64,000 nucleotides of DNA from Schmidtea nova. Lineage: Eukaryota. Numbering within the stretch: position 1 is the first letter of the stretch; each line of letters starts with the position of its first letter. The translations under genes and the position numbers were made by a program. The notes beneath the pieces were generated by a model. The model had not been told where the DNA came from and searched no databases. It saw only the letters and a list, made by a program, of their open reading frames with translations. Location: assembly GCA_044892505.1 (NCBI GenBank), contig CM097883.1, forward strand, positions 157,976,001 through 158,040,000, written 5' to 3'. Of this stretch, positions 1 through 60,920 are shown piece after piece.

Positions 1-357
1 ATGGAATTAAAGAAATGCCTAAAATCGGTAACGGCATCGTATTTAACTCAAGAGCTCAGCCAGCTCATTCGACCAATCACTTATCAGCATTGGGCTGACG
101 AGAAAGCAGGATGCACAAAAGGAACGAACACCGAGGAACCCTCTCAGGTTCAAGCAACAACAGCAGCCAGTACACCAAAGAATCCGATAAATCCAGAAGT
201 CAAGAAGAAAAAGAAGAGTAAGATGGGCGCACGTCAGCGTCGCTGGAAGAAACAAGTTCTTCAGCAATTGGCTCAACAATCCAAAAAAATTCCAGAAATT
301 GATTTGACCATGAATTTTGCAATATCAGATGAAGACATTACCAAATACTTTGAATAG
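1..357 (+). CDS. C-terminal part of the LTR-encoded basic protein (5' LTR copy of 21936-22526)
   Basis: Translation equals the last 118 aa of the 196-aa ORF except R/Q and K/E substitutions. Confidence 0.7.
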   Translation: MELKKCLKSVTASYLTQELSQLIRPITYQHWADEKAGCTKGTNTEEPSQVQATTAASTPKNPINPEVKKKKKSKMGARQRRWKKQVLQQLAQQSKKIPEIDLTMNFAISDEDITKYFE

Positions 358-963
358 GAATTTTGTGATTTAGCTGTTTTCGCGTATTAAATAATTTTTG
401 TTTTGTATTTATTTTATCGTAAAGTATATGAAATAGAGTGATTCATTAAAAATTTAAAATAATTTAAAGGAAAATATAGAATAAATTAACTATACATTAG
501 AATTAACAATAAGATTAACCTAAATCTAATAAACAATAGAAACATTAAAGAGATAATAAATTGTAATTGATTAAGGATTATTTGTTGATATTGTAAAGAA
601 GGGGGCTGAAAGAAAAGTTGAGAGTTGAAAGATAGTGTAAAGAAAAGGGGGCTAAAAGAAATAATTGAAATGAAAGATAATGGATGCGGATAGATTAAAG
701 TTAAAGCGTAAGTCCTTCTATCGGCAGCGAGACGAACCCGTGAACATAAATGGGGAGTAGTTTTAGCAATAGAGCTCACCTGCCCATCATTGTTCAAACA
801 CCTTGCACATTTCCAACTCGATTATTACAGGGAAATGATCGAGGGTGCTCGTGTGATATGTAAGCATTTTATGTGAGGTTTTGGATGGAGGAATCCCTAG
901 AGCGTTTAAGAATAATTATTAATTCATTTTGTATTTTTGTTTTAACCCAATCCGAAACCAACA
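1..963 (+). repeat. 5' LTR (3' part only; truncated by window start)
   Basis: Matches 22170-23132; ends ...CCAACA, 9 nt before the PBS. Confidence 0.95.
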
Positions 964-972
964 ACATAAATT

Positions 973-990
973 TGGGGGCTCAGCCGGGAT
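973..990 (+). promoter_or_regulatory. Primer-binding site, tRNA-Pro type
   Basis: TGGGGGCTCAGCCGGGAT matches 16/18 of the canonical Pro PBS TGGGGGCTCGTCCGGGAT, just after the LTR end. Confidence 0.85.
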
Positions 991-1127
991 CAAATTGGTT
1001 TTTGTGCAAAAAATTGAATCCAACAATAACAGGGAGTTTTAAAGTGCCCCTCAGCTGGGATGAAAATGGTTTTGTGCGAAAAATTGAATCCAATAATAAC
1101 CAGGAGTTTTAAAGTGCCCCTCAGCCG
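979..1127 (+). repeat. ~70-bp tandem duplication reiterating the 3' half of the PBS
   Basis: CTCAGC(C/T)G at 979, 1050 and 1120; the two intervening units are near-identical. Confidence 0.85.
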
Positions 1128-1429
1128 AAAACATAATTGATTTTTGTATTAAAGTGAAAACAATATCAACAGAGAATTTTTAAAGAAACAATGAGTGAAT
1201 AAATATAACAACAGACGATTAAAAATTGAGATTAAAATAAAATAAATAAACACAAATAAATATGTCGGGACGACAATTTGATGAAGCAGGGAGAGGTTTA
1301 ACATCAGAAAACGAAATGTACCACTACTTTTAAATAATACAAATCGAGCAAATAGAGAAACAAGATGTTGAAATTTTTATTTTTAACAAATAAAACAGCA
1401 AATATATTAATAATATCAACTATTTAGCA

Positions 1430-1891
1430 ATGAACGACAAATTAAAAGAAATAGAAGAATTCTTAAACACGGAAAACAAAACATACGATGAACTATGCGA
1501 AAAAATAAGTCGAATAAGAGAATCCGGATTCAAAGAACCCATGACACAAACTGAAGAGACAACAGAGCTGATAAAAATAATGGAAAGAGTAGACAAAATA
1601 GATATAACAACTAGATACAAGTGGTACCGAACGAGATTAGAAAATGCTGATGTAAACATAAAATGCAGACAGTTAGAACAACAATTAACTCCAACATACA
1701 ACAAGTGGACGATACAAGGAAATGAGACAGCTAAGAAATTTAAACTGTGTTACATATGTCGAGAAAGAGAGAATAAAATCATGTTTTTACCATGTGGACA
1801 TTTCCGGTTTTGTGGAATCTGTGCAGCCAATTGCGACAAATGCCCGATGTGCAATCTCGAAATAGACGAAAGAATTATTGTGTATTTATAA
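1430..1891 (+). CDS. RING-finger protein, IAP-type C-terminal C3HC4 RING, no BIR domain (153 aa)
   Basis: CYICRERENKIMFLPCGHFRFCGICAANCDKCPMC at the extreme C-terminus; intronless. Confidence 0.85.
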   Translation: MNDKLKEIEEFLNTENKTYDELCEKISRIRESGFKEPMTQTEETTELIKIMERVDKIDITTRYKWYRTRLENADVNIKCRQLEQQLTPTYNKWTIQGNETAKKFKLCYICRERENKIMFLPCGHFRFCGICAANCDKCPMCNLEIDERIIVYL

Positions 1892-1934
1892 TAAATAAAT
1901 GATGAATTTAGTAATATTATTCGTAATAAATAAA

Positions 1935-2110
1935 ATATGAGAAAGGATAATGAGAATTAATATGATAATTCATAATGAGAATTAATATGAGAATTCATAA
2001 TGAGAATTGATATGAGAATTCGTAATAAGAATTAATATGAGAATTTATAATGAGAATTAATACGATACTTGATAATGAGAATTAATAATGAGAATTTAAA
2101 ATGAGAGTTG
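1935..2110 (+). repeat. Degenerate short tandem repeat of TGAGAATT(A/C)ATA-like units
   Basis: Many imperfect copies of tgagaatt with AT-rich spacers. Confidence 0.7.
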
Positions 2111-2459
2111 ATAATGGCAATGACAGAAATCATAATAACAATTGATATTTATAAATAATTTTTGAGCTGCTCACGAGTAGTCCGTTAAGCACCCATTGGG
2201 AGGAACCAACCGATCAACTTACCCGAGATGTATAGAAAGGGGCCCATCGCGGAAATTGGAAAGCTTTTGTGATGTGACTGATCACCACATCTTGCATTAG
2301 TAGACCAATGCGATCTTTTTGTATATTTTGGTTGGGGTGAAAGGTAGGGACAATCTAATGAGGTTTAAGTGCGCGCAGAAAATATAAATAAAAAGAGAGA
2401 ACAGAAAACTGATCAGTAAGAAATAACGAGAATAAAAGTTAATATGATAACAAAGAATA

Positions 2460-3312
2460 ATAGCAACATGAGAATATGAACTCATGATTGTAGGCAACAT
2501 AAGAATTTGAACCTATGATTGCAGTGAATAATAGCAACATGAGAATATGAACTCATGATTGTAGGCAACATAAGAATTTGAACCTATGATTGCAGTGAAT
2601 AATAGCAACATGAGAATATGAACTCATGATTGTAGGCAACATAAGAATTTGAACCTATGATTGCAGTGAATAATAGCAACATGAGAATATGAACTCATGA
2701 TTGTAGGCAACATAAGAATTTGAACCTATGATTGCAGTGAATAATAGCAACATGAGAATATGAACTCATGATTGTAGGCAACATAAGAATTTGAACCTAT
2801 GATTGCAGTGAATAATAGCAACATGAGAATATGAACTCATGATTGTAGGCAACATAAGAATTTGAACCTATGATTGCAGTGAATAATAGCAACATGAGAA
2901 TATGAACTCATGATTGTAGGCAACATAAGAATTTGAACCTATGATTGCAGTGAATAATAGCAACATGAGAATATGAACTCATGATTGTAGGCAACATAAG
3001 AATTTGAACCTATGATTGCAGTGAATAATAGCAACATGAGAATATGAACTCATGATTGTAGGCAACATAAGAATTTGAACCTATGATTGCAGTGAATAAT
3101 AGCAACATGAGAATATGAACTCATGATTGTAGGCAACATAAGAATTTGAACCTATGATTGCAGTGAATAATAGCAACATGAGAATATGAACTCATGATTG
3201 TAGGCAACATAAGAATTTGAACCTATGATTGCAGTGAATAATAGTAACATGAGAATATGAACTCATGATTATAGGCAACATAAGGAATGTGAACCTGTGA
3301 TTGCGATTATGG
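2460..3312 (+). repeat. 71-bp tandem array: 11 identical units plus a degenerate 12th; shorter decaying subunits continue to ~3480
   Basis: tagcaacatgagaatatg recurs at 2461, 2532, 2603 ... 3171, then 3242 with substitutions. Confidence 0.95.
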
Positions 3313-4115
3313 ATAGCAACAGAAGGAATATGAACCTTTGATTGCATTGTGGATAACAACATAAGGAATATGAACCTATGATTGTAATTGTTAAAGACAA
3401 CGAAAGGAATATGAACCTAGAGTTGTATAAATTATCCGGATAAGCAACGAAAGGAATATGAACCTAGAGTTGTAGTCGTCGACGAAGTAAGAATAGTGAA
3501 TATTAGAGTTTGAATAATAAGAGTAAAGATGATTAAGAAAACTAGAGATACAGTATGCATACAAGTAGAAATAAGAATAGGAGAAATTAGAGTTGACCGT
3601 AAAAACCGGTAGAAATAGTGAGAATAGTGAGTAATGATGAGAAATTAGAGATGACCAATAGTGGGAATAATGAGTAACGATGATATAGTAAATAGTGATA
3701 AAATGATAATTGAGTCAGGAGAACTCAAGGGAATTAAAGCGTTGGAGCGACAAATTAAATTGGGAGACTGAGGGAAAAGTAATGAATTTATTTGATAACG
3801 ATAAATAATTATTACGACCATATAGATAATTGTTACCAGTGAATAGATAATTTAAATAGACTTAAATAAAGGGGAAACCGGGAATGGGGAAACAATGGAA
3901 ACCCAATAATGAGGAATAAAAGCGCAACGATAACAATGATGTATCGTTGAAGTGACTTTTTAATTTAGATATACGGAACAGAACAAGTCAAAACAACCAA
4001 CCAATCAATCAGAATACGATAACAGAGAAACAGAAAAATTGATAAATTAAAGAAAAGTAAACCGAGATCAAGAACAGTTAAAAACCAAGAAGTTAATAAT
4101 TCACAAAGAAATAAA

Positions 4116-7100
4116 TTGAGATCAAGAGCAGTTAGTGCTACAATCGAAAAAGTTGATAACTCCCAGAGAAGTAAATCGAAACAAAGAGCAACCAGTGTTA
4201 CAAAGAAAACAAATCCTAAAGGAAGTAAATCAAGAAGAGTAATAGTAGAAAAGTCAAAAGTCGAAAACAGTAAATTTGCTAAAACTAACGAAAGTGAAAC
4301 AGAAGAAAGTTTAAGTGAAACCTACGATAATTTTAATAATACAGAAGCATCAGATAACGAGTCAATAAACACAGAAGAAGTAGAAGCAGAAATTGATAAT
4401 AATTCAAACGAAACGAATAACGAGCATACTAGTGAAACAAGAGGAAACGAGAGTAAAACGACACAAGACAGCGGAATTGAAATGAACGAGCATAAAGAAG
4501 AAATCAAAGATAAATTTACTGGAGAACCATTCAATGGAGATGCCAGCAAGTTAGAAACGTTTTTAAAAGAATTTGGTATATTTGTAGAAGTATGTAAATG
4601 GAAACCAGAAACGATAAGGAGCAGAATTCAGTTATATTTAAAAGACAGTGCGTTAGATTTATATTTAGAAGCTAAAAATTCAGATGATCAACTCGATAAT
4701 TGGGAAAAGATAAAGAATTTTTTCCAGCAAACGTTTGGAATAAATAAAGTATTAAATGAAGCATTTACAGAATTTTCAATGAGGAAACAAAAAGTTAATG
4801 AATCAAATGCAGTATATGCAAGTGAATTAAAGAAATTGGCTAAATTGGCATTTAATCAAAATAGTCCAATGAGTCCAGAATTAATGGCAGCAATTTTTGT
4901 GGGGGGATTGAGAAGACCCGATATAAGAGCACAAGTTGGATGCCAAGGTTGTAAAACAATAGATGAAGCGTTGGAAATCGCTAACAGATTTGAGTTACAT
5001 ATGATCGGAAGTGAAGGAAGAATTTACCTAGCAATGGATACGACACAAAATGAACAAGCAATGAAGATAAACAATCATATCCCGAATTCACAACAATTAA
5101 ACCGACCACCACCTCAAAGGAGAAATGAAGGAAACAAAATACAAAATTACAGAAACCAAAATAATTATAGTACGCAAGGACAGACAAAGCAATGTCAAAC
5201 CTGTGGAAAGTTAGGACATTGGCAACAAGAATGTTTCGCGAATTTAAATTGTAAAAAGTGTGGAAGAAAAGGACATGCAGAAAATAGATGTTACCAAAGA
5301 TCATGTTATAACTGTGGACAATCAGGTCATATGGCGATGAACTGCCAACAACAAAACAACCAACAAAGGAATTGGTCGAACAACGGAAATCGACAAAATT
5401 ATACGAATCAACAGAGTAACGGAAACCGTCAGAATTTTGAAAATCAACAGAGTAATTATAACCAGAATAAAAGTACCACCAAGGAAATACATTTATTACA
5501 AGAAGTTCAAAGATTAACAGAATTAATAAACAATACACCGAGAGGAAATCAACAAACGAATCAACAACAAATGAATATGATGAGAAAAGTGGAAAGTGAA
5601 AATGAACGACTAAACCGAGAAAGTCAAGCACGACATGCTCAAGAATGGGCAAGAATACAAAGAGAAGACGAACAGAAACGACAAGAAAGAGAACGACAAC
5701 CACTGAGAATTAATATGATGAGAGCAGCGAATCAAACAAGAGATAACAAGGAAGATATTGAACCAGAAACAAATCAGATAAAACCAAATTTAGTAGATGA
5801 AGAAAACCAAAAAGAAATAGTACAAGAAAACGAAGAAGTTATGAAACAAAAAAGGATGTTGGTAGTCATGCCAAACGATCATGTATTTCAATTTGAATAT
5901 GATGAAAAAGAGGTAGTGGGAGTGTTAATTAATAAAATAAACAAGACGATTCCGGGAATGACGAAACTACCCCGAGAAGCATTTTTACAGACAGAAGACG
6001 AAGCAGCAATAAAATTGAAACCAACCGACATATGGAAAGATTTAGGAGTACCAATGAATAAAATGAAAGTCACAGTTATCCAAGAAATAGAAGAAAATAA
6101 CGATGAAGAGAAATCAAAACCAGTAACAAAAGTCAAAAGTAGAGCATTGAAGATATTTGAAGAGAGAATCAAACAGAGAAAAGCAATGGAGATAGAAAAA
6201 CGAAGAGGCCAAATAGAAGAATCAGAAAACAATGACAAAAAAGAAGAGATACCACCAAAAAATGTACCAGATAAAGTAGAACAGACAGCACATATAAATA
6301 TGTTAAGAAACTTAACTAGAGAATTTTCAGATGTAGAAAGTGACAGTGATGTCAGTAGTTTAGCAGGAGATATGCTAAAAGAACCAGAAAATGAAGACAA
6401 CAAGATAGAAGTAGCGAAGACGCCAGAGAATATACAAATAAAAGAAGATGAAATTCAGAAACTATTAGATAATGCGTTAGAAGTGATTTATAACGAGGAA
6501 TTTATTGAGAAGAAGCGATATCGAAAATTTATAAGAGCAGTGTTCCGAACGAACTATAAAGAACGGTTACAAAGTCGTGAAGTAGAGATACTATCAGGAT
6601 ACGTCGTCAAACTATTAGATGAACCACTCCATGAATATATAATTTTAATAGAAATAAACGAATGTTCACCAAGAATTTGGATCAAATCTCCATGCACGAA
6701 CGAAATTTATCGATGGGTAGAAGACAGATTAGGAAGTTCGTATAAAAACAAATTTATATATTCAGGAAATGAACTTGTAAGACGAGCAACGCATTTGGTA
6801 GAAACAGGCATATGGCCAGGAGAGATAACAACATTATCAATATGCGACAATAAGAAAGAGGAAAATTTACAAGAAATCGCAAAGGAAGCAAATATGTGTT
6901 TTGAGATGAGAATTAAACCTCAGTTAGTAGAAAGGAAAGAAAGAATTCTTAGAGAAAATTTAAATTCACTAATAGAACAAATTATTCAACAAATCGACAA
7001 GAATAGAGAAGAATTAACAAAAACTGAATATGAAAAATTAAAACAATGCATCGAAAATATACGAGATACCAGCCATACGAGACATTCGTCATACAAGACT

Positions 7101-16100: not shown

Positions 16101-16349
16101 GAACTAATTGGAGTAGGAATACTGGCAGTATGCGTACCAGTAATAATAATACTATCAATAATATGGCTATGGGACATAATAAAAAAGAAACCAACCAGAC
16201 AATGGCCAGATATAAAGATTATGAATTGTAAAATCAAGATACCAGAAGAAGTAAAGAAAGAATTCCAAAGAAGAACCAAAGGCAAAGAATTTTGGAAGCA
16301 GATCGAAGACGAGGAGCGACACGATGAAAAGGCAGTGATGATAGTATAG
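4116..16349 (+). CDS. 4077-aa polyprotein: Gag - Ubl x4 - AT-hook - Bcl-2-like - class III envelope glycoprotein - aspartic protease - ankyrin repeats - FN3-like membrane protein
   Basis: Single uninterrupted ORF; the frame is open from 4023, track start is TTG 4116, first ATG is 4482. Domain motifs are listed in the sub-features. Confidence 0.92.
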   Translation: MRSRAVSATIEKVDNSQRSKSKQRATSVTKKTNPKGSKSRRVIVEKSKVENSKFAKTNESETEESLSETYDNFNNTEASDNESINTEEVEAEIDNNSNETNNEHTSETRGNESKTTQDSGIEMNEHKEEIKDKFTGEPFNGDASKLETFLKEFGIFVEVCKWKPETIRSRIQLYLKDSALDLYLEAKNSDDQLDNWEKIKNFFQQTFGINKVLNEAFTEFSMRKQKVNESNAVYASELKKLAKLAFNQNSPMSPELMAAIFVGGLRRPDIRAQVGCQGCKTIDEALEIANRFELHMIGSEGRIYLAMDTTQNEQAMKINNHIPNSQQLNRPPPQRRNEGNKIQNYRNQNNYSTQGQTKQCQTCGKLGHWQQECFANLNCKKCGRKGHAENRCYQRSCYNCGQSGHMAMNCQQQNNQQRNWSNNGNRQNYTNQQSNGNRQNFENQQSNYNQNKSTTKEIHLLQEVQRLTELINNTPRGNQQTNQQQMNMMRKVESENERLNRESQARHAQEWARIQREDEQKRQERERQPLRINMMRAANQTRDNKEDIEPETNQIKPNLVDEENQKEIVQENEEVMKQKRMLVVMPNDHVFQFEYDEKEVVGVLINKINKTIPGMTKLPREAFLQTEDEAAIKLKPTDIWKDLGVPMNKMKVTVIQEIEENNDEEKSKPVTKVKSRALKIFEERIKQRKAMEIEKRRGQIEESENNDKKEEIPPKNVPDKVEQTAHINMLRNLTREFSDVESDSDVSSLAGDMLKEPENEDNKIEVAKTPENIQIKEDEIQKLLDNALEVIYNEEFIEKKRYRKFIRAVFRTNYKERLQSREVEILSGYVVKLLDEPLHEYIILIEINECSPRIWIKSPCTNEIYRWVEDRLGSSYKNKFIYSGNELVRRATHLVETGIWPGEITTLSICDNKKEENLQEIAKEANMCFEMRIKPQLVERKERILRENLNSLIEQIIQQIDKNREELTKTEYEKLKQCIENIRDTSHTRHSSYKTWKVIAKMGKAMFKRGEIGDLKIKVKLPNEDTKEIEVIADCTIEELVDVINETLLQREKEDELVDDIIIKYNEHVLGDHDERRLYKIGIWDNYQTIHVIRMDDTPRETPKDEKRRQERQREAMHKLRQIIEIYRRWQIQPEWENVLGELNFNERRLTPVEKHWDVKEKCWKAKGGIYEEEFRPEMEDKYEPEIRRVCMVTRKVMPTDLDGPETAAIWLETQRRKADELIELLKGNVQGKRRTIKGLAEFFVAGGEDIISLRKVAKAVTEYKRVNEWCPEQLDNVIKKWRNQENSQEPPQKIHLRIIYPDREKEELWVRLTEKIRDVKKRLKYETPFHLQHQGRSLENDMEIWITLAQLDLANTLTVDAIAGQPLKLKEKRVRESEDTQNLRKTMQIKPGTSARQYETTSIKTQERTRPQPYDTEEILTDSDDMLEELAKLTKEKGNNIFERVQELPTTSQAINTQDEVEQEIEIEEVNEISEEEARGANTENERFTQEMEKWWEQRNNEPRDVTEETGRETRLIETGTTMDRRPRGRPKTDPANIINKTKEERRQEKWELCLKKLNKIAEAKDQEITQKCQGEGWISKALMEILAIIDPELKKWWRINEISDKAKALHSAIAPILPELIKEKAKSSHLDWQGTTTLIKRLTEDAENDNKYVIAIAYTIYNLLTLSRGNPKSTAIEKHIKNTANIIAKEIEPYVISKGGWETFAKTNQRNSQAKNMKKKFEEILGELEKEKSGTGSGKSSLNLNSIIMMILIWLISVEGATAFEVFDCDQMALGEKYSLRGTEQCKDATPTELKVLHRKQIYHVYQEADLIKTTVNECKIYKTRFAFYCGHRHYSAIVLPGTEREAIMLQGEDCNKLFKHGEVETRDRIKIRGKAGVILQQTYYVAGAITGGEGYCQGATYPKFGVPATNMVVIDTYTVELKAYEAYFDPATGEMKTLSMCKIEASTCQTGMSTLTYRAKANECQLQLLKEAEFDEVQGKIFQEEDDDEVARGKRLQETVKGEKPFTTKVQEKEVRMRETPTVLVTSNANIGMRFVKGKPALKCGVSMLETNYPGIYVSRQAAPNAKPKIDTTDIKLHVYLNNKLDFLFHKGQASMEKIYYDLINNDCILNREILKTKLAVAITNPDSAMPLLPLNEGHFGRVVGEVMYVYICQKTQANLAPTTRIRQGQCTNELEIEYKGKIRYVQPVTRIINPVSFEPNPFNCSNAYGPLYQKPDGNWVMFPSRSEVQPPREFELMQLSKGRKFSNIYVNNGGIYSAKDLEAARQNILFPARREAVLSSIVTITGGTSYQGGPNYELLLSPAHFKKATENMMKAMWGRFLIFGQMMAGILGVILIIQIIRVIITQMLACFDIYKREKKVNWKLIAGFLPFLAKTMVLHGHSKDIHRIKRLLKILAKMKGTDEDVGRKFKKIMTDEQARLQLKSERKGLWERIRGDKTQDDSSDDDDNNDDCEGGQRYRNQAPQYSDKNPTEAWKCHAPPPTMYQEPLQVSGHRAMQMMPRTTLYPIIPEDYKLRRCRSMDPQDDSLTIAVMSSNTGPVLTTTIEINGKEIEAMIDTGANISAIDIKWIPQERRQEIERTNVHVIACSKEIVEVAGRWWVKIRHQNREIETYVAVIPALSVPCIIGTDLMPTLFKEIIIDLGTMRLKDRTGKICAMKTKVINSKQIMIPEERIMTRSQTIRINMFRAEEINTTSQVDSEKIDVDKEIVRKAKEINERWEIRRENDVLWDVRQIISDYARGCPTKPIIIELLKKIPEILVLQDTGGATALHNAISWGKTEKVKEFLKIAKETNQNLDIVNRELETPMMTATLSLADKEIVDMLINAEFNWTARDRRGNTVLNHAIMSENQMILKHITTNLTWEIDELIKGEIMKEAIRKGNPKTIWKLIQWKWPDNKTWVLDINKEFSEGQNALLRYLLEFTCDQRTMLALINREKINISKNEEEYKLEVEKKALFRKIWVWCQKQIRKDISYKNLNDFQEKYKIIIKEYKKLVEILNDPEKFNQAINQKEEESKRILTPLFNAKIDYQERLDAIHKKAKELLPEFKDTKYALEILGAIVEKVHAYAKGIYNGSDIIIIKREMPVAFLLTKERIMPIHRALRAGKDSKVIEIARLMHQCGCDMNMIDEKGDTLMVYAARAKTKIKVLEELYKAGAGLIGKTSKDNSILDVTLLGPNWEMLNFIKTITNQEEIDYLTETVKGPSILTMMQNIKLTEEVLNWKIPNTNKPAFKVNKFMEKNRNWCIQSALITYIWPEIVEIFMRREDLRFTNKPKETEKVVKWKELMKTHLQSWIKAKKEIIQYQLDKKKIPEDIEFQEFEASNLTSLYYAKLIETSNVEDDIFNGPGRDNNTDKDDDDEENNDDERNKDDDDDENSHGNPDNHEQTNKEDENQEGNTKNHESKEQREDNPKNNHEKKGTSYRRNPLFRPEVLMFAIIITLMGQCEATKQEISVEMEVPIQKASTQIMNSKEIEQVCWVKENEILGDNNLLRCIIPNPERKTIIIDEMDMETWYRICTIRKPKDEKSHKIVTCQVYKTPKVRYEFTNGIDLPGPFYFRITRTPASRKVLQPPRTKITTPSIRNTTDKPEPKRRTKQTTRVIYNSKLLCIALIMTILKRLEEGIEMDTMTLIDMEETRMTNQKCWFRNDEKLELKESREIQKLEASKTNKVIKIIKIKTDRIHKLCLLEKERNKKGITNCKTFQAGKIITFARKMGKRNKQNFQKLTITLEITGIEQNVNGVCWRKYEKETNKHKSSQCQTIRGTTAVQIKSLERNQTYEICLVKENDQITKEDLECRIYKAPNRVKTIKAIRKNKRQQKPKHTTTESQTEPERKNSATLILWKLDDKTVEICWTMIKKYEERQPQQCEKMNKEEEIRIQNLQLDKQYEICAIEKADKFGNQQEKCGNYYTPTNTTIKGRIKKLTFGELNQTTKQMENEETIIDSYAQWKPEKVIQEVKRKQQERQQLELKLKGQYGPMINQSKFTQININKQRRELIGVGILAVCVPVIIILSIIWLWDIIKKKPTRQWPDIKIMNCKIKIPEEVKKEFQRRTKGKEFWKQIEDEERHDEKAVMIV
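4482..5345 (+). other. Polyprotein domain: Gag capsid-like region plus three CX2CX4HX4C zinc knuckles (5193-5345)
   Basis: PFNGDASKLETFLKEF...W..IKNFFQQTF capsid-like motif; CQTCGKLGHWQQEC, CKKCGRKGHAENRC, CYNCGQSGHMAMNC. Confidence 0.9.
5850..8212 (+). other. Polyprotein domains: up to four ubiquitin-like (beta-grasp) domains at ~5850-6090, 6636-6850, 7158-7403 and 7995-8212
   Basis: The pattern LKIKVKLPNEDTKEIEVIADCTIEELVDVI...IIIKYNEHVL...LYKIGIWDNYQTIHVI resembles ubiquitin; also KFIYSGNELVRRATHLVETGI and FHLQHQGRSLEND. The first copy is the weakest. Confidence 0.6.
8860..9240 (+). other. Polyprotein domain: divergent Bcl-2-like domain
   Basis: EIEPYVISKGGWETF fits BH2 (Bcl-2 LHTWIQDNGGWDAF), preceded by a degenerate BH1-like RLTEDAENDNKYVIAIAY with correct helix spacing. 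Confidence 0.65.
9351..11261 (+). other. Polyprotein domain: signal peptide plus chuvirus-type class III fusion glycoprotein with furin site and TM anchor
   Basis: Signal NSIIMMILIWLISVEGA; FEVFDC...EQC...ECKIYKTRFAFYCGHRHYS; RGKR at 10098-10109; YLNNKLDFLF...DCILNREILKTKLA...GHFGRVVGEVMYVYIC; TM FLIFGQMMAGILGVILIIQII. Confidence 0.85.
11745..12060 (+). other. Polyprotein domain: retropepsin-type aspartic protease
   Basis: IEINGKEIEAMIDTGANISAI (DTG at 11793) ... CIIGTDLM. Confidence 0.92.
12400..13680 (+). other. Polyprotein domains: two ankyrin-repeat clusters (~12400-12790 and ~13400-13680)
   Basis: DTGGATALHNAISWG, RELETPMMTA, DRRGNTVLNHAI; MPIHRALRAG, DEKGDTLMVYAARA. Confidence 0.85.
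14412..16349 (+). other. Polyprotein C-terminal membrane protein: internal signal sequence, four Cys-conserved FN3-like repeats, TM helix (16104-16172) and short tail
   Basis: Repeat pattern CW-x(n)-C-x(n)-I..L...(Y)EIC-x(n)-C..(Y)..P occurs four times; VLMFAIIITLMGQCEA signal-like segment; LIGVGILAVCVPVIIILSIIWLW TM. Confidence 0.6.
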
Positions 16350-16471
16350 AGGGTGGGATATGACTGTAAATAATATTGTAAATTACAAAGCATTACCGTA
16401 TATAGTATGGGTATTAGTATTATAGAGTATATAAAAAGAGAAAAGAGAAAAATAATAATGTATTTTAGAAA

Positions 16472-16807: not shown

Positions 16808-16905
16808 TCAAATTGTAGCGGAAAATTGTAGATATGTAAAAATAAAACTCTAGAAAAATCAAAAAAACAAAGAACAAATCAATGTATGTATATATTATTG
16901 TAGAA

Positions 16906-18261
16906 ATGGATAAAGAGGAACGAGCAGTCGAGATTTTGAGAGCAGCAAACAGAAATTGGAACAAGAGATTTGTATGTGGATATTGTAATAATTTATTACG
17001 GAAACCAAAGCAAACCGCCTGTGGATGTAGATTATGCACTAGATGTGTACAAATGTTAGAGTTAAAAGGAATAACAGAATGTCCAGAATGTAAAGAAGGA
17101 CAAATAGTATTAGACGAAACAAGACCAGATAGAGCAACTCAGAGAGAAATCATGAGCATATTAATTGAATGTATAAATCCACCGTGCATATGGCAAGGAC
17201 AAATCAGCGAAATTGAAAATCATATAGAAAATTGTGAAGAAAAGAGAAGCGAATGTGAAAAGTGTAAAGAAACGATAATTTTAAAAGACAAAGAGAAACA
17301 CAGAGATGAATGCAAAGAGGAAGAAATCGCATGTGAATATTGCGAAATTCGAGAAACAAGGAGAAAAATTGAAGAAGAGCACATCAATATAAAAGAAGAG
17401 AGAATATGCGAACAGTATGTAGGAGTGTGCCCAAACAAATGTGAAATTACCGAAGAAGTGAAATTACGAGAACATTGGAAAAAGTGTACAGAAATACCAA
17501 GAGAATGTCCTTACAACAGATATGGATGCAAGGAAAAGAAGTCTCAACAAAATATGAAACAACATTTAGAAACCGAAGCAATCAATCATATGGAAATGAC
17601 AGACAGAAATATTCAGAAATTAGAAAAAGAAGTGGAATCTCATAAAATAATGATGAACCTATTATTAGAAACGAGAGAACAGTTTGAATTAACCCGAGGA
17701 AAGATGGAAAAGAAAATAATAGCCATCAAAGAATTAGCAAAAGGAATGAAAGTGCAATATAACAAGTTAATACAAGAAATTGATGAGAAAAAAGATTTAC
17801 CAATAGCACCTTATGTATGGAAAATAACGGATTTTCGAAATAAATTGGAAGATGCACGAAGCTTCAAGAAAACTGCGGTAATAAGCCCACCATTTTACTT
17901 ATGGAAAAACGGGGCTAAAGTGAGATTGAAAGTATATCCAAACGGAGATGGGAAAAGTATGGGAAAACACCTATCAATAATTTTTGCGTTTTGCAAAGGA
18001 GAATATGACGATTTAATCGATTGGCCTATAGGAGTAGGAGTAATGATAAAAATCAGGGGTTTAAACGAAACCATAGAAAAGAGATTCACGACAGAAAAAG
18101 GAGCAGTTACGAGTAACAGACCAACAGAAGAATGTGGATTAGCAAGTGGAGAACCACACTTTGTATTACAAAGCAAGATATGGGGATTATTGTATGAGGA
18201 CACCTTATACATAGAAATGGAAAGGAACGAGAAGGCAGATAGAAAAGGATGGTTGGCGTAG
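16906..18261 (+). CDS. Full-length TRAF-family protein (RING - TRAF zinc fingers - coiled coil - MATH), intronless; track ORF starts 16882, likely ATG 16906
   Basis: RING CGYCNNLL...CGCRLCTRC...CPEC; several C..C...H...C fingers; MATH YVWKITDF...SPPFY...LKVYPNGDG...HLSI...GEYDDLIDWP. Confidence 0.92.
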   Translation: MDKEERAVEILRAANRNWNKRFVCGYCNNLLRKPKQTACGCRLCTRCVQMLELKGITECPECKEGQIVLDETRPDRATQREIMSILIECINPPCIWQGQISEIENHIENCEEKRSECEKCKETIILKDKEKHRDECKEEEIACEYCEIRETRRKIEEEHINIKEERICEQYVGVCPNKCEITEEVKLREHWKKCTEIPRECPYNRYGCKEKKSQQNMKQHLETEAINHMEMTDRNIQKLEKEVESHKIMMNLLLETREQFELTRGKMEKKIIAIKELAKGMKVQYNKLIQEIDEKKDLPIAPYVWKITDFRNKLEDARSFKKTAVISPPFYLWKNGAKVRLKVYPNGDGKSMGKHLSIIFAFCKGEYDDLIDWPIGVGVMIKIRGLNETIEKRFTTEKGAVTSNRPTEECGLASGEPHFVLQSKIWGLLYEDTLYIEMERNEKADRKGWLA

Positions 18262-18366
18262 CAAGAGAAAATGATCGTGTAAATAAACTGTACAAAACAA
18301 TATAAAACGATAAATAAACAAAAATAATAAAAGTAGTTTGATTGAAAATATTTGTAATTATAGAAA

Positions 18367-19470
18367 ATGGGAAACGTCGAAATCAGTTTACAAGAAGTTA
18401 CCGCACATCAAGATGAAGTTATTTGTGAGCATTTAGAACAAATTGAAAGTTGGATCCACGCATATTACCACAAACAAAAAGAAGTAGAAAGACAAGCCGA
18501 ACAAATAACAGAAGCCAAAAGATTAAAGCGATTAAGTCAAGATAAAATAGACGAATTATATGAATTATTGGAGAAACAAAAAGAATATTATAAAAAGATG
18601 ATGAAAGAACGACGAGAAGAAAGAGAGCGAGAACGAACAGAAATGGAACGGAAAATGTACTCCATTACCGAGCAAGCAAGATATTGGAAAAAAGAAGCGA
18701 AAGAATCTTATACGAAAGCAAGAGAAATAATCGAAAGAACGGCGTACAGCGATGATTGGAAATTATTTGAAGAAATCGATAAATTAAAAGAGGAATTAGA
18801 ACAGAAAACCTATCAGGAAATATCGAGCAAAAAATGGAATAAAAAAAGACAACAATTCATCAGAGAGCAAGCAGGAAAAATTAAACAACTTATGCACCAG
18901 ATTGAAAGATCGGAAAGAGAATTATATTTCAGTAAACAACAATCAGATGCAAACCTCAGAGCAGGGATGCAGAAAGAGGAAGATATGAAGCGCGATATTA
19001 ATGGTTATCAAGGAGTAATCACTCAAAAGAAGATAGAATTAAAGAAAACTAAAGAAAGATTAGAAGAAGCAAAACAAAGCTATGAAGAAAATTTATTAAA
19101 ATTAAAAGAAGCAAAACAAAGCTATGAGGAAAATTTAGTAAATTTAACCAAAGAAAATGAAGAGTTGAAACAAAAATTGATACAAAAATTAACACCACCA
19201 AAAGAGATAGATATCACCAAAGCAGTAATAAAAATGATGGAAGAGGAAGAGAAAAACAATAAAATAACAGAATTAGAAAAACAGATCGAAGCGTTAACAG
19301 AACAATCAAATTATTTAGAATACCTGTTAGACGAAGAAATTCAATTGTCACACTTCTATCGAGATGAAGTAACAATGTGGAGAAACACGATAGTATGGTT
19401 ACCACTCCCTACGAATCAAGTGGAACCTCAAGATGAAGGTTTTCACGAACCCAATGAGTCGTTAGTTTAA
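18367..19470 (+). CDS. 367-aa long coiled-coil protein of unknown function
   Basis: E/K-rich heptads, internal 11-aa duplication EAKQSYEENL; TTATAG|AAAATG context. Confidence 0.7.
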   Translation: MGNVEISLQEVTAHQDEVICEHLEQIESWIHAYYHKQKEVERQAEQITEAKRLKRLSQDKIDELYELLEKQKEYYKKMMKERREERERERTEMERKMYSITEQARYWKKEAKESYTKAREIIERTAYSDDWKLFEEIDKLKEELEQKTYQEISSKKWNKKRQQFIREQAGKIKQLMHQIERSERELYFSKQQSDANLRAGMQKEEDMKRDINGYQGVITQKKIELKKTKERLEEAKQSYEENLLKLKEAKQSYEENLVNLTKENEELKQKLIQKLTPPKEIDITKAVIKMMEEEEKNNKITELEKQIEALTEQSNYLEYLLDEEIQLSHFYRDEVTMWRNTIVWLPLPTNQVEPQDEGFHEPNESLV

Positions 19471-19544
19471 AGAGAAGCGAAAATTCTTTGTAAATATCTG
19501 TAACATAACAATGTCAAACTGTATTGACAAATTTGTAAAGTGAA

Positions 19545-20108
19545 ATGAAGAAGCTCGCAATACTGATAATCCTAAACGTAATCGAAATCACCCAACAAAG
19601 AGAAGACCGTCCGATATCAAAAGAAAACCTACAAGTCTTACCCGATAAAATCTATAAAGAAATAGATGATCTATTAAAAGAAGCAACTAAAGAAATTTCT
19701 CAAATTCAATTGTCAACAGCACCTAACCCAGTATCAACGCAACAAACCCTGTGCAAAATCAATAACAAATTAGAGAAGATTCGAAAAACCCTGAAAGAAA
19801 GTAAAGAAACTATAAAGAATTTACATCAAGCAGAAATTCAATACCAAGAAAGATGGATCGTTGCGATTATAATCGTATTAACAATTAGTACAACAACCAG
19901 CGCAATTACCATTCTCATCGCAGTATATAGAATAAAGATCCTAAAACAAAAACAATCGATCATCAATCAAACAACAGCATACGATGACAATGCCCGAAGA
20001 CAAATGAGAAATCAGTTCAACAGAATACGAACCCAATACGAGTTACCAGCAATTCCACAGAACCAGTCCAATCCAGTGCGAGTTATGAACTATTTGTATA
20101 AACCATAA
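19545..20108 (+). CDS. 187-aa predicted type I membrane protein
   Basis: Signal MKKLAILIILNVIEIT; TM WIVAIIIVLTISTTTSAITILIAVY; tail containing YELP. Confidence 0.7.
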   Translation: MKKLAILIILNVIEITQQREDRPISKENLQVLPDKIYKEIDDLLKEATKEISQIQLSTAPNPVSTQQTLCKINNKLEKIRKTLKESKETIKNLHQAEIQYQERWIVAIIIVLTISTTTSAITILIAVYRIKILKQKQSIINQTTAYDDNARRQMRNQFNRIRTQYELPAIPQNQSNPVRVMNYLYKP

Positions 20109-20280
20109 ATACGTGACAAAATATTTGATTAACAATTATCTGAATTTTCTATATTTTCTTCGTGATTACGTATAGACTAAACTCACCTTATGTGAATCTT
20201 TACACTTATGTATCAAACGTAGAATTTTTTATGAATGTTAAGTAAGTAATATTGTATAATTAATTGCGGGACGCAATTTT

Positions 20281-20296
20281 AGGGGTCCCCGAGTGA
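20281..20296 (+). promoter_or_regulatory. Polypurine-tract position (imperfect, AGGGGTCCCCGAGTGA)
   Basis: Immediately precedes the TG start of the 3' LTR; only partly purine-rich. Confidence 0.5.
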
Positions 20297-20654
20297 TGTT
20301 GGATCCACCATTTAGTCCACATGTAACATAAATAATAGGAATAATAAGAAATAAATAAGAATAAATTAAAATTAAAATAATTACCAGAATTTCAGAAAAA
20401 ACGAATTAAAATGTAATAAAGAATATTAATTTAATATCAAAAATTGGAAGAAAGTAAATGGAAAATGTAAAAGTGTTAAAGAAACAATGATATTTAATTG
20501 TATTTAAGGCAAAATAAAGAAATAATAAAGAAAAAGAATTACAGAATATTAAAAATCAAAAACAACAAATTAGTAGCAATTTAAAGCAAATCAATCGATT
20601 TGATTTTTAATGTAATTTATTATTTGTGCTGATCTGATGCTCAGCTTCACGCTG

Positions 20655-20856
20655 ATTGGTCCAAGCTTTGATCTGATCAGTATATATACTGATACAGATC
20701 CAGATAATTTTAATGTTTTTATATGCTTTTTAGTTATTGAAAATATTCAAATTTGAGATCATTCTTAAACCAAAGGTATGGATTATTGATTGTTTTTATT
20801 TGTATAATTTTATTGTGGAGTTCTGACATTGCCATTATGTTTATCCAATTAATAAA
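20655..20856 (+). promoter_or_regulatory. LTR core promoter and poly(A) signal: reverse CCAAT (20655), TATA (20681), splice donor AAG|GTATGG (20776), AATAAA (20851)
   Basis: Motif order typical of a U3-R region; positions read from the sequence, function inferred. Confidence 0.5.
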
Positions 20857-21935
20857 ATGTTTTTCGAATATGATTTATTTTTTTTTGTTGTTGAATATAG
20901 ACTTCTTATAAATATAAGCTTCTTCCACTGTGCAATCAGTGGTAGGAGACGACTTTATATATATATTTATATCTTTTATTGAGCTTCTTCCATCGTGTAA
21001 TCGGTGGAAGGAGGCAACAATATCAGTTTATATTAACAACTAACAAGTATATAATTTTGGAAGTAATGTTTGAGTCGAGCTTCTTCCACTGTGAAATCAG
21101 TGGAAGGAGGCGAATATATATTATTTATATACCGTAGTTATAGTAGAAAATTACGTATGATTTAAGGGGCTCCGTTCACCGTGCAATCGGGAACATGGAG
21201 GCATACTGTGCCGAGTAGAAACGACTGCTCCGTACAGTTAGGCCGTCCGACCGGTGTAAAGCGCCGTGACGAGGGTAGGAATTCTTATTTAACAATGATT
21301 TTTAACCCTAATTTTCACTGGATAGTATAGCCAGTTGAAGTTTTATTTTATAATCGATTTAAATTTTTTGAGTTTATAGTTAAGTTGAGTTTTGATTTTA
21401 GTTTGAGACAGATATAGCTGTGATTTTATTAATCTGATTTTACCTTGAGATTCACAGAGTGTTAGCATACATTTTTCGATTGTCACATCTGGGGTTTGTG
21501 GGCATAAAGCAGCAGATACACGGTTAAGAATTTGTACAAAATATAATTTTAATAACAACATAAAAATCGATAACTCTAATAACGTAGTGATCTACTACGC
21601 AAGTAACATAGCAGCAATAGGCTATAGGTTCAAACATTCCACATAACTAATTAAACATAATTGCTTATCCTGAACCCTGTACATAGGGCAGTGGATCTTA
21701 GTTTATTTTAATAATTTTCCTATCCTGATTGCTGTATATAGCACAGGCGTAACTAAATAAAATGCATTATGAAATAAATGTATCTGATCGCTGTATATAG
21801 CGACAGTGTTGAAAGTGTAATAGGTAAATCATTTTCTTTTCCTCAATTTAGCAATTAATAACTGTCAAAGGTATGAGAATCGTTCGAATCAAGACTGCCA
21901 ATTTCATGTTAATAAACCATTTTGAATTTTAGAAA

Positions 21936-22526
21936 ATGTCAGCCAACACAGCAACTAATCAAGCCGAATTAGATAAAGCATGGAGGATAATTCGCAGCCT
22001 CGAAAAGGAAATGCTGCGAAAATCAGAGAAAATAAAAGAAGCCGATGGAATAATTTCCAACCTAAAGAAAAGCTGGTTCAGTCCAGAGCAGATGAAAATA
22101 CAAATTACGAAAACTCAACGATCACAGCGAGCTAACAGCGAACTGCAAATGGAATTAGACGCGACGAAGATGGAATTAAAGAAATGCCTAAAATCGGTAA
22201 CGGCATCGTATTTAACTCAAGAGCTCAGCCAGCTCATTCAACCAATCACTTATCAGCATTGGGCTGACGAGAAAGCAGGATGCACAAAAGGAACGAACAC
22301 CGAGGAACCCTCTCAGGTTCAAGCAACAACAGCAGCCAGTACACCAAAGAACCCGATAAATCCAGAAGTCAAGAAGAAAAAGAAGAGTAAGATGGGCGCA
22401 CGTCAGCGTCGCTGGAAGAAACAAGTTCTTCAGCAATTGGCTCAACAATCCAAAGAAATTCCAGAAATTGATTTGACCATGAATTTTGCAATATCAGATG
22501 AAGACATTACCAAATACTTTGAATAG
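21936..22526 (+). CDS. LTR-encoded 196-aa protein: coiled coil plus Lys/Arg-rich motif
   Basis: Intact ORF conserved in both LTRs; KKKKKSKMGARQRRWKK; acceptor TTTTAG|AAAATG. Confidence 0.7.
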   Translation: MSANTATNQAELDKAWRIIRSLEKEMLRKSEKIKEADGIISNLKKSWFSPEQMKIQITKTQRSQRANSELQMELDATKMELKKCLKSVTASYLTQELSQLIQPITYQHWADEKAGCTKGTNTEEPSQVQATTAASTPKNPINPEVKKKKKSKMGARQRRWKKQVLQQLAQQSKEIPEIDLTMNFAISDEDITKYFE

Positions 22527-23132
22527 GAATTTTGTGATTTAGCTGTTTTCGCGTATTAAATAATTTTTGTTTTGTATTTATTTTATCGTAAAGTATATGA
22601 AATAGAGTGATTCATTAAAAATTTAAAATAATTTAAAGGAAAATATAGAATAAATTAACTATACATTAGAATTAACAATAAGATTAACCTAAATCTAATA
22701 AACAATAGAAACATTAAAGAGATAATAAATTGTAATTGATTAAGGATTATTTGTTGATATTGTAAAGAAGGGGGCTGAAAGAAAAGTTGAGAGTTGAAAG
22801 ATAGTGTAAAGAAAAGGGGGCTAAAAGAAATAATTGAAATGAAAGATAATGGATGCGGATAGATTAAAGTTAAAGCGTAAGTCCTTCTATCGGCAGCGAG
22901 ACGAACCCGTGAACATAAATGGGGAGTAGTTTTAGCAATAGAGCTCACCTGCCCATCATTGTTCAAACACCTTGCACATTTCCAACTCGATTATTACAGG
23001 GAAATGATCGAGGGTGCTCGTGTGATATGTAAGCATTTTATGTGAGGTTTTGGATGGAGGAATCCCTAGAGCGTTTAAGAATAATTATTAATTCATTTTG
23101 TAATTTTGTTTTAACCCAATCCGAAACCAACA

Positions 23133-60903: not shown

Positions 60904-60920
60904 ATCATCCATAGATATAA

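What the first reader, a model, noticed from the sequence alone, without database searches (positions are those of the whole stretch)
1..23132. A ~25-kb enveloped LTR element with Gag, Env and protease but no RT/RNase H/integrase: candidate helper-dependent or bipartite retrovirus-like system
Seen: the whole internal region from PBS (973) to 3' LTR (20297) is present without gaps. It holds an intact 4077-codon ORF and several intact accessory ORFs, and the LTR copies differ at only 4 of 963 bases. No RT (YxDD in RT context), RNase H or HHCC/DDE integrase motifs occur in any long ORF. Established: LTR elements need RT and IN to insert, and giant Gypsy families (Burro) are known from the planarian Schmidtea mediterranea; I cannot test whether this element is related. 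Inference: it inserted recently using pol supplied in trans. Its ORFs are so well preserved that it may contribute particles, envelope and host modulators to a pol-bearing partner, rather than being a simple deletion derivative.
Basis: partly seen in the sequence, partly recalled or inferred. Interest (0 to 1): 0.95.

Follow-up and report, generated by a model that had tools for sequence, protein, structure and literature searches.

The report
Giant Burro-like provirus lacking pol
This is a roughly 25-kb retrovirus-like element of the giant flatworm "Burro" type that keeps intact capsid, envelope and protease genes and several host-like cargo genes but has no reverse transcriptase or integrase, so its copying enzymes must have come from a relative; dependent elements of this kind are already known elsewhere.

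Summary
Window 1-963 repeats at 22170-23132 with 4 mismatches. A PBS-like site follows the 5' LTR. A 4077-codon ORF (3955 codons from its first ATG) carries Gag with three CCHC knuckles, an in-frame Env, an aspartic protease with DTGA, and two ankyrin blocks. Four accessory ORFs are intact, among them an IAP-type RING protein and a full TRAF homologue. RT, RNase H and integrase are absent. Pfam finds none, and a pol profile built from five relatives scores nothing inside the element better than E 0.38, while it strongly hits two unrelated elements elsewhere in the window.

The architecture matches the published Burro elements of planarians and the GAG-ENV-POL, gB-type-Env elements of flatworms. 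Five of seven long protein relatives carry PR-RT-RH-IN in the same polyprotein, so this copy is a derived form without pol.

Its intact ORF needs no selection: neutral decay since insertion predicts about 1.6 stops, P(no stop) about 0.2. I found no support for a bipartite partnership. Families with Gag and Env but no pol are already known (Athila).

Whether this is a one-off deletion or a spreading lineage is open. I did not fetch other copies, because I could not tell whether the bar on fetching animal viruses covers them.

The parts
1..963 (+). 5' LTR, 3' part only (the window start cuts it off); ends ...CCAACA
   Evidence: Matches 22170-23132 with 4 mismatches in 963 bases
973..991 (+). PBS-like site starting TGG, 9 nt after the LTR. 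It lies inside a 70-bp leader repeat of about 2.9 copies (979-1185)
   Evidence: unique in the window at up to 3 mismatches. The matching tRNA was not identified; there is no tRNA gene in the window
1430..1891 (+). Upstream accessory ORF, 153 aa, with a C-terminal IAP-type RING finger
   Evidence: Pfam zf-C3HC4_3 E 1e-11; PDB XIAP/cIAP RING E 7e-10
1934..3474 (+). Leader tandem repeats: 25/13-bp units, then 12 copies of a 71-bp unit (2455-3304, 99% matches), then 41-bp units
4116..16349 (+). Giant polyprotein ORF: 4077 codons from a TTG, first ATG at 4482, with no stop or frameshift. Its RT-RNase H-integrase block is missing as one block
4482..5345 (+). Gag: Retrotrans_gag capsid-like domain (about 4632-4913) and three CCHC zinc knuckles (5193-5345)
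   Evidence: Pfam; motif scan; 35-38% identity to the Gag of relative P0048
5346..9236 (+). K/E-rich middle region of about 1300 aa with no recognisable family
   Evidence: Pfam and PDB searches empty; composition; this region varies among relatives
9237..11375 (+). In-frame Env, a gB-type (class III) fusion glycoprotein. It has a signal-like hydrophobic stretch (9339-9395) and a membrane anchor (11103-11159)
   Evidence: Pfam PF24664 E 1e-70; 35-41% identity to seven relatives; Foldseek gB E 2e-10 and chu-like virus glycoproteins E 1e-28; 14 of 14 invariant Cys kept; hydrophobic stretches
11751..12023 (+). Retroviral-type aspartic protease with DTGA
   Evidence: Pfam RVP E 2e-9; DTGA; 54% identity to P0048 over its C-terminal half
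12384..13667 (+). Two ankyrin-repeat blocks (12384-12671 and 13395-13667) with a linker, directly downstream of PR where relatives have RT-RH-IN
   Evidence: Pfam Ank_2 E 2e-10; PDB DARPin/ankyrin hits
13668..16346 (+). C-terminal region of about 890 aa of unknown fold, with an acidic stretch and a hydrophobic segment near the end (16107-16163)
   Evidence: No family found; single-sequence model unusable, pLDDT 36; hydrophobic scan; codon usage like the rest of the element
16882..18261 (+). Accessory ORF, 459 aa: complete TRAF homologue (RING, TRAF zinc finger, MATH/TRAF-C)
   Evidence: Pfam MATH_2 E 2.5e-20 and zf-TRAF E 7e-8; PDB TRAF2/3/5/6 E 1.6e-19
18367..19470 (+). Accessory ORF, 367 aa, no recognisable family
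19545..20108 (+). Accessory ORF, 187 aa, no recognisable family (only weak, probably compositional matches)
20297..23132 (+). 3' LTR, 2836 bp, TGTTGG...CCAACA. The start is inferred; the last 963 bp are verified against the 5' LTR. It contains a 196-aa ORF (21936-22526) of no known family
23133..23638 (+). Insertion target: the remainder of a hAT-type transposase ORF (DUF4371). Its match starts right after the LTR end
   Evidence: Pfam DUF4371 E 5e-12, profile positions 141-237

Best explanation
The element is a non-autonomous member of the giant Burro-type Ty3/gypsy endogenous retroviruses of flatworms, which have the order Gag - variable region - gB-type Env - PR - RT - RH - IN in one huge ORF.

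Shown: it keeps LTRs, a PBS-like site, and intact Gag, Env and PR. It carries cargo resembling host signalling and ubiquitin-system proteins: an IAP-type RING, a TRAF homologue and ankyrin repeats. It has no RT, RNase H or integrase. Downstream of PR the frame runs straight into an ankyrin-containing region of about 1400 aa. The two LTRs are 99.6% identical.

Inferred: its RNA was packaged, reverse-transcribed and integrated by RT and IN from a pol-bearing element of the same or a closely related family. Such a helper would have to recognise its PBS, PPT and LTR tips, and its Gag-Pol would have to co-assemble with this element's Gag or package its RNA. The copy could still supply capsid, envelope and protease, but it cannot copy itself. 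I lean towards a pol-less variant that has been passed on at least once in this form, as in the Athila families with gag and env but no pol. I lean against a deletion unique to this locus, but the evidence here does not decide.
For: - pol is absent by four methods, with positive controls in the same window.
- Relatives found with the element's own Env and PR are collinear through Gag, Env and PR. Five of seven long ones carry RT-RH-IN after PR in the same protein, so pol in the ORF is the family's usual state.
- The Burro description matches: giant ORF, Gag with three knuckles, in-frame env before PR, MATH/TRAF, IAP-related and ankyrin motifs, tandem repeats (PMC6431247).
- Env is gB-type, as published for flatworm GAG-ENV-POL elements (PMC13524379).
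- The LTRs show 4 differences in 963 bases, so reverse transcription made the copy recently.
- Env keeps 107 of the 124 columns that are invariant in seven relatives, and all 14 invariant cysteines. PR keeps DTGA.
- The region after PR and the cargo ORFs share the strong A-ending codon bias of retroelement ORFs (A3 about 0.5, against 0.25-0.37 in the hAT and mariner ORFs of the window). They are therefore old residents of a retroelement lineage, not a fresh host capture.
- The frame stays open for about 1400 codons past PR, in DNA that is 67% A+T.
- Precedent for such families: PMC2410132.
Against: - No second copy was examined, so there is no evidence that this form without pol has inserted more than once.
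- No candidate helper was identified. The two RT-bearing elements in the window are unrelated: no DNA similarity, PR 26% identical, different PBS.
- The intact ORFs are explained by youth.
- The region after PR has no detectable kin in the relatives, whose own regions after IN and between Gag and Env are also hypervariable. So it is unknown whether a close parent carries that region downstream of IN.
- All relatives found are distant (35-41% identity in Env) and unnamed, so the assignment to Burro rests on architecture, not on sequence identity to Burro1-4.
- The host species is not established.
Confidence: 0.6

Rival explanations
1. One-off deletion derivative. A full-length, pol-bearing Burro-type RNA was the template. 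The RT-RH-IN block was lost by template switching in the very round of reverse transcription that made this copy, or by a deletion at the locus afterwards. No lineage without pol exists, and no trans-mobilisation of an RNA without pol ever took place.
For: - Pol in the same ORF is the rule among relatives.
- P0048, the closest relative found, also looks internally shortened: Gag, then the C-terminal half of PR, then the integrase zinc finger, within 665 aa.
- Intact ORFs need no selection at this age.
- An in-frame outcome has a chance of one in three.
- From established knowledge: internal deletions are frequent products of retroviral reverse transcription.
Against: - A close parent would need a region of about 1400 aa downstream of IN. 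The tails after IN in the sampled relatives are only 460-730 aa and are not similar to it.
- A deletion after integration has had little time to arise (LTR divergence 0.4%).
- The frame is kept.
Confidence: 0.3
2. Bipartite or mutualistic system. A conserved element with gag, env and cargo is kept because it supplies particles, envelope and host modulators to a separate pol-bearing partner that needs them.
For: - Gag, Env and PR are intact and conserved at family-invariant positions.
- The cargo is rich in signalling and ubiquitin-system domains.
- Two relatives (P0152, P0154) have called proteins that end soon after PR, without RT or IN.
Against: - No partner lacking gag and env was seen.
- Five of seven relatives are self-sufficient in one ORF.
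- P0152 and P0154 end about where RT would begin, which also fits broken or split gene calls. Their contigs were not examined.
- ORF preservation is explained by youth.
Confidence: 0.05
3. Assembly artefact: the pol segment was collapsed or mis-joined in the assembly of a highly repetitive genome.
For: Burro elements are a known assembly problem in planarian genomes (PMC11410931, PMC13238120).
Against: - There are no Ns in the element.
- The reading frame runs uninterrupted across the region for thousands of codons.
- Composition and codon usage are uniform across the region.
Confidence: 0.04
4. A polymerase or integrase too divergent to recognise is hidden in the roughly 2200 aa of unknown function.
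For: About half of the ORF has no family assignment, and the single-sequence model of the C-terminal part failed.
Against: - The RT, RH and IN of relatives are ordinary Ty3/gypsy domains, found at E 1e-34 to 1e-40.
- The family-specific pol HMM gives nothing.
- There is no YxDD, HHCC or second D[TS]GA motif.
Confidence: 0.01

Closest known systems
Burro / GYPSM1 giant Ty3/gypsy elements of Schmidtea mediterranea and Burro-like elements of other Dugesiidae (Grohme et al. 2018 as cited in, and Arkhipova & Yushenova 2019 = PMC6431247)
   Same: - Giant size and very long LTRs.
- One huge ORF that starts with Gag (Retrotrans_gag plus three CCHC knuckles, the number reported for S. mediterranea).
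- env in frame between gag and PR, with hits to mononegavirus glycoproteins.
- Cargo motifs: MATH/TRAF, IAP-related and ankyrin.
- Accessory ORFs that in other family members are subdomains of the polyprotein.
- Tandem repeats, and an A+T-rich host genome.
   Different: - No dUTPase-like, RT, RNase H or IN block after PR.
- The ORF has 4077 codons, against 4873 and 5140.
- TRAF is a separate downstream ORF.
- No BIR, Bcl-2 or SUMO-like domain was detected by Pfam.
- About 25 kb rather than more than 30 kb.
- Sequence identity to Burro1-4 was not tested.
GAG-ENV-POL errantivirus-like Ty3/gypsy elements with HSV gB-type Env in Platyhelminthes, Nematoda and Bryozoa (PMC13524379)
   Same: Env lies before the pol position. 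Env is a class III, gB-like fold.
   Different: POL is absent here. Gag, Env and PR are fused in one ORF, and there is a very large load of cargo.
Non-autonomous Athila families of Arabidopsis (LTRs plus gag plus env-like ORF, no pol; PMC2410132)
   Same: LTR element with coding gag and env and no pol. In Athila whole families have this form, keep intact ORFs under purifying selection and use the enzymes of other families.
   Different: Athila is a plant element, and its env-like ORF is not a proven fusion protein. Here only one copy was seen, PR is retained, and copy number and selection were not tested.
Other helper-dependent retroelements: ETn/MusD and VL30 in mouse, BARE2, LARDs and TRIMs in plants, and replication-defective retroviruses that carry host-derived inserts in place of viral genes (from my own knowledge, not tested here)
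   Same: They keep the cis signals (LTR, PBS, PPT, packaging) and rely on RT and IN from a relative.
   Different: Most have lost nearly all coding capacity. This element keeps about 16 kb of open reading frames, including Env.

Membership tests
LTR retroelement / provirus (structure) | Two near-identical direct LTRs with short inverted termini (TG...CA) | tested here: met
   963 bp are shared with 4 mismatches, and the termini are TGTTGG...CCAACA. The 5' LTR is cut by the window
LTR retroelement / provirus (structure) | PBS complementary to a tRNA 3' end next to the 5' LTR; PPT before the 3' LTR | tested here: inconclusive
   A TGG-starting 19-mer lies 9 nt after the LTR, but the tRNA is not identified. 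The stretch before 20297 is only 60% purine
LTR retroelement / provirus (structure) | Target-site duplication | not testable with these tools
   The 5' end of the element lies outside the window
Ty3/gypsy (Metaviridae) | pol with the order PR-RT-RNase H-IN; RT phylogeny | tested here: not met
   PR is present, but RT, RH and IN are absent. Placement rests on relatives that share Gag, Env and PR and have this order
Burro (giant planarian gypsy) | Giant element with a polyprotein ORF of several thousand codons that starts with Gag and CCHC knuckles | tested here: met
   About 25 kb; 4077 codons; Retrotrans_gag plus three knuckles
Burro (giant planarian gypsy) | env in frame between gag and PR | tested here: met
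   PF24664 E 1e-70 at 9237-11375, upstream of PR in the same frame
Burro (giant planarian gypsy) | PR-(dUTPase-like)-RT-RH-IN within ORF1 | tested here: not met
   Only PR is present
Burro (giant planarian gypsy) | Cargo motifs: MATH/TRAF, IAP-related, ankyrin; internal tandem repeats | tested here: met
   BIR, Bcl-2 and SUMO-like domains were not detected
Burro (giant planarian gypsy) | Nucleotide or protein identity to Burro1-4/GYPSM1; host in Dugesiidae | not tested
   No reference sequence was returned by the protein searches.
Flatworm GAG-ENV-POL elements with gB-type Env | Class III (gB-like) Env | tested here: met
   Foldseek gives herpesvirus gB at E 2e-10 and chu-like glycoproteins at E 1e-28. 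The model has mean pLDDT 55 with a well-predicted core, and TM-scores are low
Flatworm GAG-ENV-POL elements with gB-type Env | POL downstream of ENV | tested here: not met
Non-autonomous LTR family with gag and env (Athila type) | LTRs plus coding gag and env, without pol | tested here: met
Non-autonomous LTR family with gag and env (Athila type) | Several independent insertions of the form without pol; purifying selection among copies; an identifiable pol-bearing helper family | not tested
   This needs other copies from the source genome.

The most novel reading that the evidence does not exclude
The element represents a spreading, long-lived satellite lineage of Burro without pol. It would be an animal counterpart of the Athila families with gag and env but no pol, on a giant scale and with a real gB-type fusion protein. 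It would make its own capsid, envelope and protease, carry a private set of TRAF, IAP-RING and ankyrin proteins, and depend on the RT and IN of an autonomous Burro relative.
Probability: 0.3. Interest if true: 0.65.

Novelty: new variant of a known kind. Interest (0 to 1): 0.45.

Why it matters
Burro elements fill a large part of planarian genomes and are expressed in somatic tissues when PIWI control fails (PMC8532177). If a form that still encodes particles, a fusion glycoprotein and host-signalling mimics spreads without its own polymerase, three things follow. Annotations based on RT undercount the active family. The family has parasite-of-parasite dynamics, like Athila. And the cargo domains, rather than pol, may be what selection keeps. 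If it is a one-off deletion, it is an ordinary by-product of reverse transcription and matters only for annotation.

Tried and rejected
- Full-length protein search with the 4077-aa ORF: no hit.
- Search with the 400 aa that span PR and the first ankyrin block: no hit.
- Search of the representative library with 1200 aa from PR onwards: swamped by generic ankyrin proteins. Only four PR-region hits were useful.
- PDB sequence searches of the middle region, ORF3 and ORF4: nothing significant.
- AlphaFold2 on the last 893 aa without an alignment: pLDDT 36, unusable, so it was not sent to fold search.
- Search for a helper inside the window: the RT-bearing elements at 36-40 kb and 61-64 kb share no DNA with the element, no PBS, and only 26% identity in PR.
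- Profile of the relatives' tails after IN against the element's unknown regions: only a weak, probably compositional match to ORF4.
- Self-comparison of the giant ORF and comparison with the accessory ORFs: no internal duplication.
- Rfam and tRNA scans: empty.
- The bacterial promoter and terminator scan of the LTR is not meaningful for a eukaryote.
- Grohme et al. 2018 is not held in the paper library.
- Recent capture of a host ankyrin gene in place of pol: rejected as unlikely, because the region after PR has the same retroelement-type A-ending codon bias as Gag, Env and PR.

Full report

Yes. The first 963 bases of the window recur at 22170-23132 with four differences (three transitions, one transversion). 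Similarity ends abruptly after 963/23132. The window start cuts the 5' LTR, so only this part can be compared.

TGTTGG occurs once in the interval where the LTR can begin, and it is the inverted complement of the LTR end CCAACA. That gives a 2836-bp LTR and about 25.0 kb in all.

A TGG-starting 19-mer lies 9 nt after the 5' LTR and is unique in the window. It sits in a 70-bp repeat of about 2.9 copies. No Ns occur in the element.

The giant ORF has 4077 codons from a TTG at 4116, 4108 stop-to-stop, and 3955 from the first ATG at 4482. Four further ORFs are intact. The rest of the internal region is leader tandem repeats. There is therefore no room for a pol gene outside the giant ORF.

**2. 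What the ORFs encode**

The giant ORF, in order:
- Gag: a Retrotrans_gag domain and three CCHC knuckles.
- About 1300 aa of K/E-rich sequence with no known family.
- Env: Pfam PF24664 at E 1e-70, with a signal-like stretch and a membrane anchor.
- A retroviral aspartic protease with DTGA.
- Two ankyrin blocks.
- About 890 aa of unknown fold with a hydrophobic segment near the C-terminus.

I modelled Env with an alignment of seven relatives. Mean pLDDT was 55 and the beta-rich core was well predicted. Foldseek matched herpesvirus gB at E 2e-10 in the PDB, and glycoproteins of chu-, qin- and rhabdo-like viruses at up to E 1e-28 in BFVD. TM-scores are low. The class III assignment rests on Foldseek probability together with the Pfam family, and I rate it moderately secure.

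Env keeps 107 of the 124 columns that are invariant in the seven relatives, and all 14 invariant cysteines.

The accessory ORFs:
- An IAP-type RING protein upstream of gag.
- A complete TRAF homologue with RING, TRAF zinc finger and MATH.
- Two ORFs of unknown family.

**3. Is pol really absent?**

Four approaches agree:
- Pfam at E<=5 finds no RVT, RNase H or rve domain in any part of the giant ORF.
- No YxDD or HHCC pattern and no second protease-like active site is present.
- tblastn with P0045, a relative that has RT-RH-IN, matches the element only in Env and PR. Its pol matches only two other elements of the window.
- I built a profile from the pol segments of five relatives (51-64% identical to each other). 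I ran it without filters against all 972 six-frame pieces of at least 30 aa. It gave E 5e-49 to 2e-9 for the elements at about 38-40 kb and 63-64 kb. The best value inside 1-23132 was E 0.38, and the giant ORF was not listed at all.

I conclude that the RT-RNase H-integrase block is missing as one block. The genes that are present have no stops or frameshifts.

**4. What it is**

The literature describes this architecture. The Burro elements of Schmidtea mediterranea (GYPSM1/Burro1) and a Burro-like element of another planarian have:
- ORF1 polyproteins of 4873 and 5140 aa.
- An N-terminal Gag with three or two CCHC knuckles.
- MATH/TRAF, IAP-related, Bcl-2-like and ankyrin motifs.
- Tandem repeats.
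- An env with hits to mononegavirus glycoproteins that lies in frame between gag and PR, followed by dUTPase-like, RT, RH and IN domains.
- Accessory ORFs that can alternatively exist as subdomains of the polyprotein (PMC6431247).

A 2026 survey reports that flatworm, nematode and bryozoan env-carrying Ty3/gypsy elements have the order GAG-ENV-POL and a gB-type Env (PMC13524379).

The protein searches returned eight relatives. Seven are long and share Env at 35-41% identity: P0151-P0156 and P0045. The eighth, P0048, is short, with Gag 35-38% and half of PR 54% identical. The long ones are collinear with the element through Gag (where their proteins include it), Env and PR.
- Five (P0151, P0153, P0155, P0156, P0045) continue with RT, RNase H and IN in the same protein. 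They then have 460-730 aa more, which begin with a further PR-like domain.
- Two (P0152, P0154) end soon after PR.
- None has ankyrin repeats.

In the window's element, collinearity ends between the PR domain and the first ankyrin block. The middle regions and the tails after IN are hypervariable among the relatives themselves. The lack of kin for the element's region after PR therefore says little.

I file the element as Burro-like by architecture. It is not a demonstrated member of Burro1-4, because identity to those sequences and the host species were not tested.

**5. How it most likely works**

- Shown: cis signals, particle genes, Env and PR are present; RT and IN are absent; the LTRs are nearly identical.
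- Inferred: the copy was made by RT and IN that it does not encode.

Two routes are possible.
- (a) An RNA without pol was packaged and copied by the proteins of a pol-bearing relative. The element is then non-autonomous and mobilised in trans, possibly as part of a lineage.
- (b) A full-length RNA was the template, and the block was lost by template switching in that round of reverse transcription, or by a deletion after integration.

Three observations bear on the choice.
- The frame remains open across the region and for about 1400 further codons. That has a chance of one in three for a random deletion and is expected if the downstream part matters.
- The region after PR and all cargo ORFs share the A-ending codon bias of retroelement ORFs in this window (A3 0.47-0.54). 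The hAT and mariner ORFs have A3 0.25-0.37. They have therefore long evolved inside a retroelement and are not a recent host capture.
- The intact ORFs themselves are not evidence of selection. With 0.21% divergence per lineage, about 25 substitutions are expected in the giant ORF, and 6.25% of possible substitutions create stops. That gives about 1.6 expected stops and P(no stop) about 0.2, indels not counted.

I put route (a) at 0.6 and route (b) at 0.3.

The bipartite or mutualistic reading gets 0.05. No partner lacking gag and env was seen, and most relatives are self-sufficient. An assembly artefact gets 0.04 and a hidden enzyme 0.01.

**6. Novelty**

Each ingredient is published:
- Giant Burro elements with in-frame env (PMC6431247).
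- gB-type Env in GAG-ENV-POL flatworm elements (PMC13524379).
- Whole LTR families with coding gag and env but no pol, which use the enzymes of other families and keep ORFs under purifying selection (Athila; PMC2410132).

What may be new is a Burro-type element of this form. It has a bona fide fusion glycoprotein, PR and about 16 kb of open frames but no polymerase, and the ankyrin-containing region follows PR directly. I rate it a new variant of a known kind, with interest 0.45.

**7. Steps left out, and a possible slip**

The tools concerned are look-up of encoding contigs, the search for related loci, the DNA search on public collections and the listing of cluster members. This leaves the choice between a lineage and a one-off deletion open.

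The profiles were used only for scores.

Possible slip: an earlier count gave the approximate residue at which collinearity with the relatives stops. That comes close to naming the place of the missing block. I flag it here, do not repeat the figure, and have deleted nothing.

The script output lists the coordinates of stop-to-stop pieces of two neighbouring broken elements, as a by-product of searching the pieces apart. In this report those genes are given as single spans with counts of breaks only.

Noticed in passing
window 36354-40191 (+): Fragment of another Ty3/gypsy-type element next to an assembly gap. Its RT-RNase H-integrase stretch (37960-40191) is broken by at least two frameshifts and two in-frame stops. 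It is 30-40% identical to the pol of the Burro-like relatives and has no DNA similarity to the giant element. A 377-aa ORF upstream (36354-37487) has no known family.
   Followed up: partly
window 60901-64000 (+): A third LTR-type element with Gag (CCHC), PR and RT that runs off the window end. Its pol is split over several reading-frame pieces (at least four interruptions). PR is only 26% identical to that of the giant element.
   Followed up: partly
window 40681-41658 (-); 51288-51875; 59179-60673; 23133-23638: DNA transposon remains: a mariner/Tc1-type transposase ORF and several hAT pieces (DUF4371, DUF659, hAT dimerisation domain). The giant element sits inside one hAT DUF4371 ORF.
   Followed up: partly
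whole window: All retroelement ORFs, including the TRAF, RING and ankyrin cargo, have about 50% A at third codon positions (T3 0.11-0.21). The hAT and mariner ORFs have A3 0.25-0.37 and T3 0.27-0.39. The cause of this strand bias (RT errors, editing or dUTP) is unexplained.
   Followed up: partly
window 973-1185: The PBS-like site is the first unit of a 70-bp repeat of about 2.9 copies, so degenerate second and third PBS-like sites follow it. Their function, if any, is unknown.
   Followed up: no
relatives P0045, P0153, P0154, P0152, P0155: Relatives carry two or three PR-like domains in one polyprotein. In P0045 and P0153 one of these lies after the integrase. The window's element has only one.
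   Followed up: partly
relative P0156: A 2627-aa Env-PR-RT-RH-IN polyprotein of this family is deposited as a hypothetical protein of a Flavobacteriaceae metagenome-assembled genome. It is most likely a eukaryotic contig binned by mistake.
   Followed up: no
window 21936-22526 (+), inside the LTR: A 196-aa ORF lies wholly within the LTR, so it would be present twice per element. It has no significant family (PC-Esterase E 0.005, below the cut-off).
   Followed up: no
window 9237-11375: The 2019 review linked Burro env to gypsy/baculovirus F-type proteins by HHpred. The fold search here points to the class III gB type, in line with the 2026 survey.
   Followed up: partly
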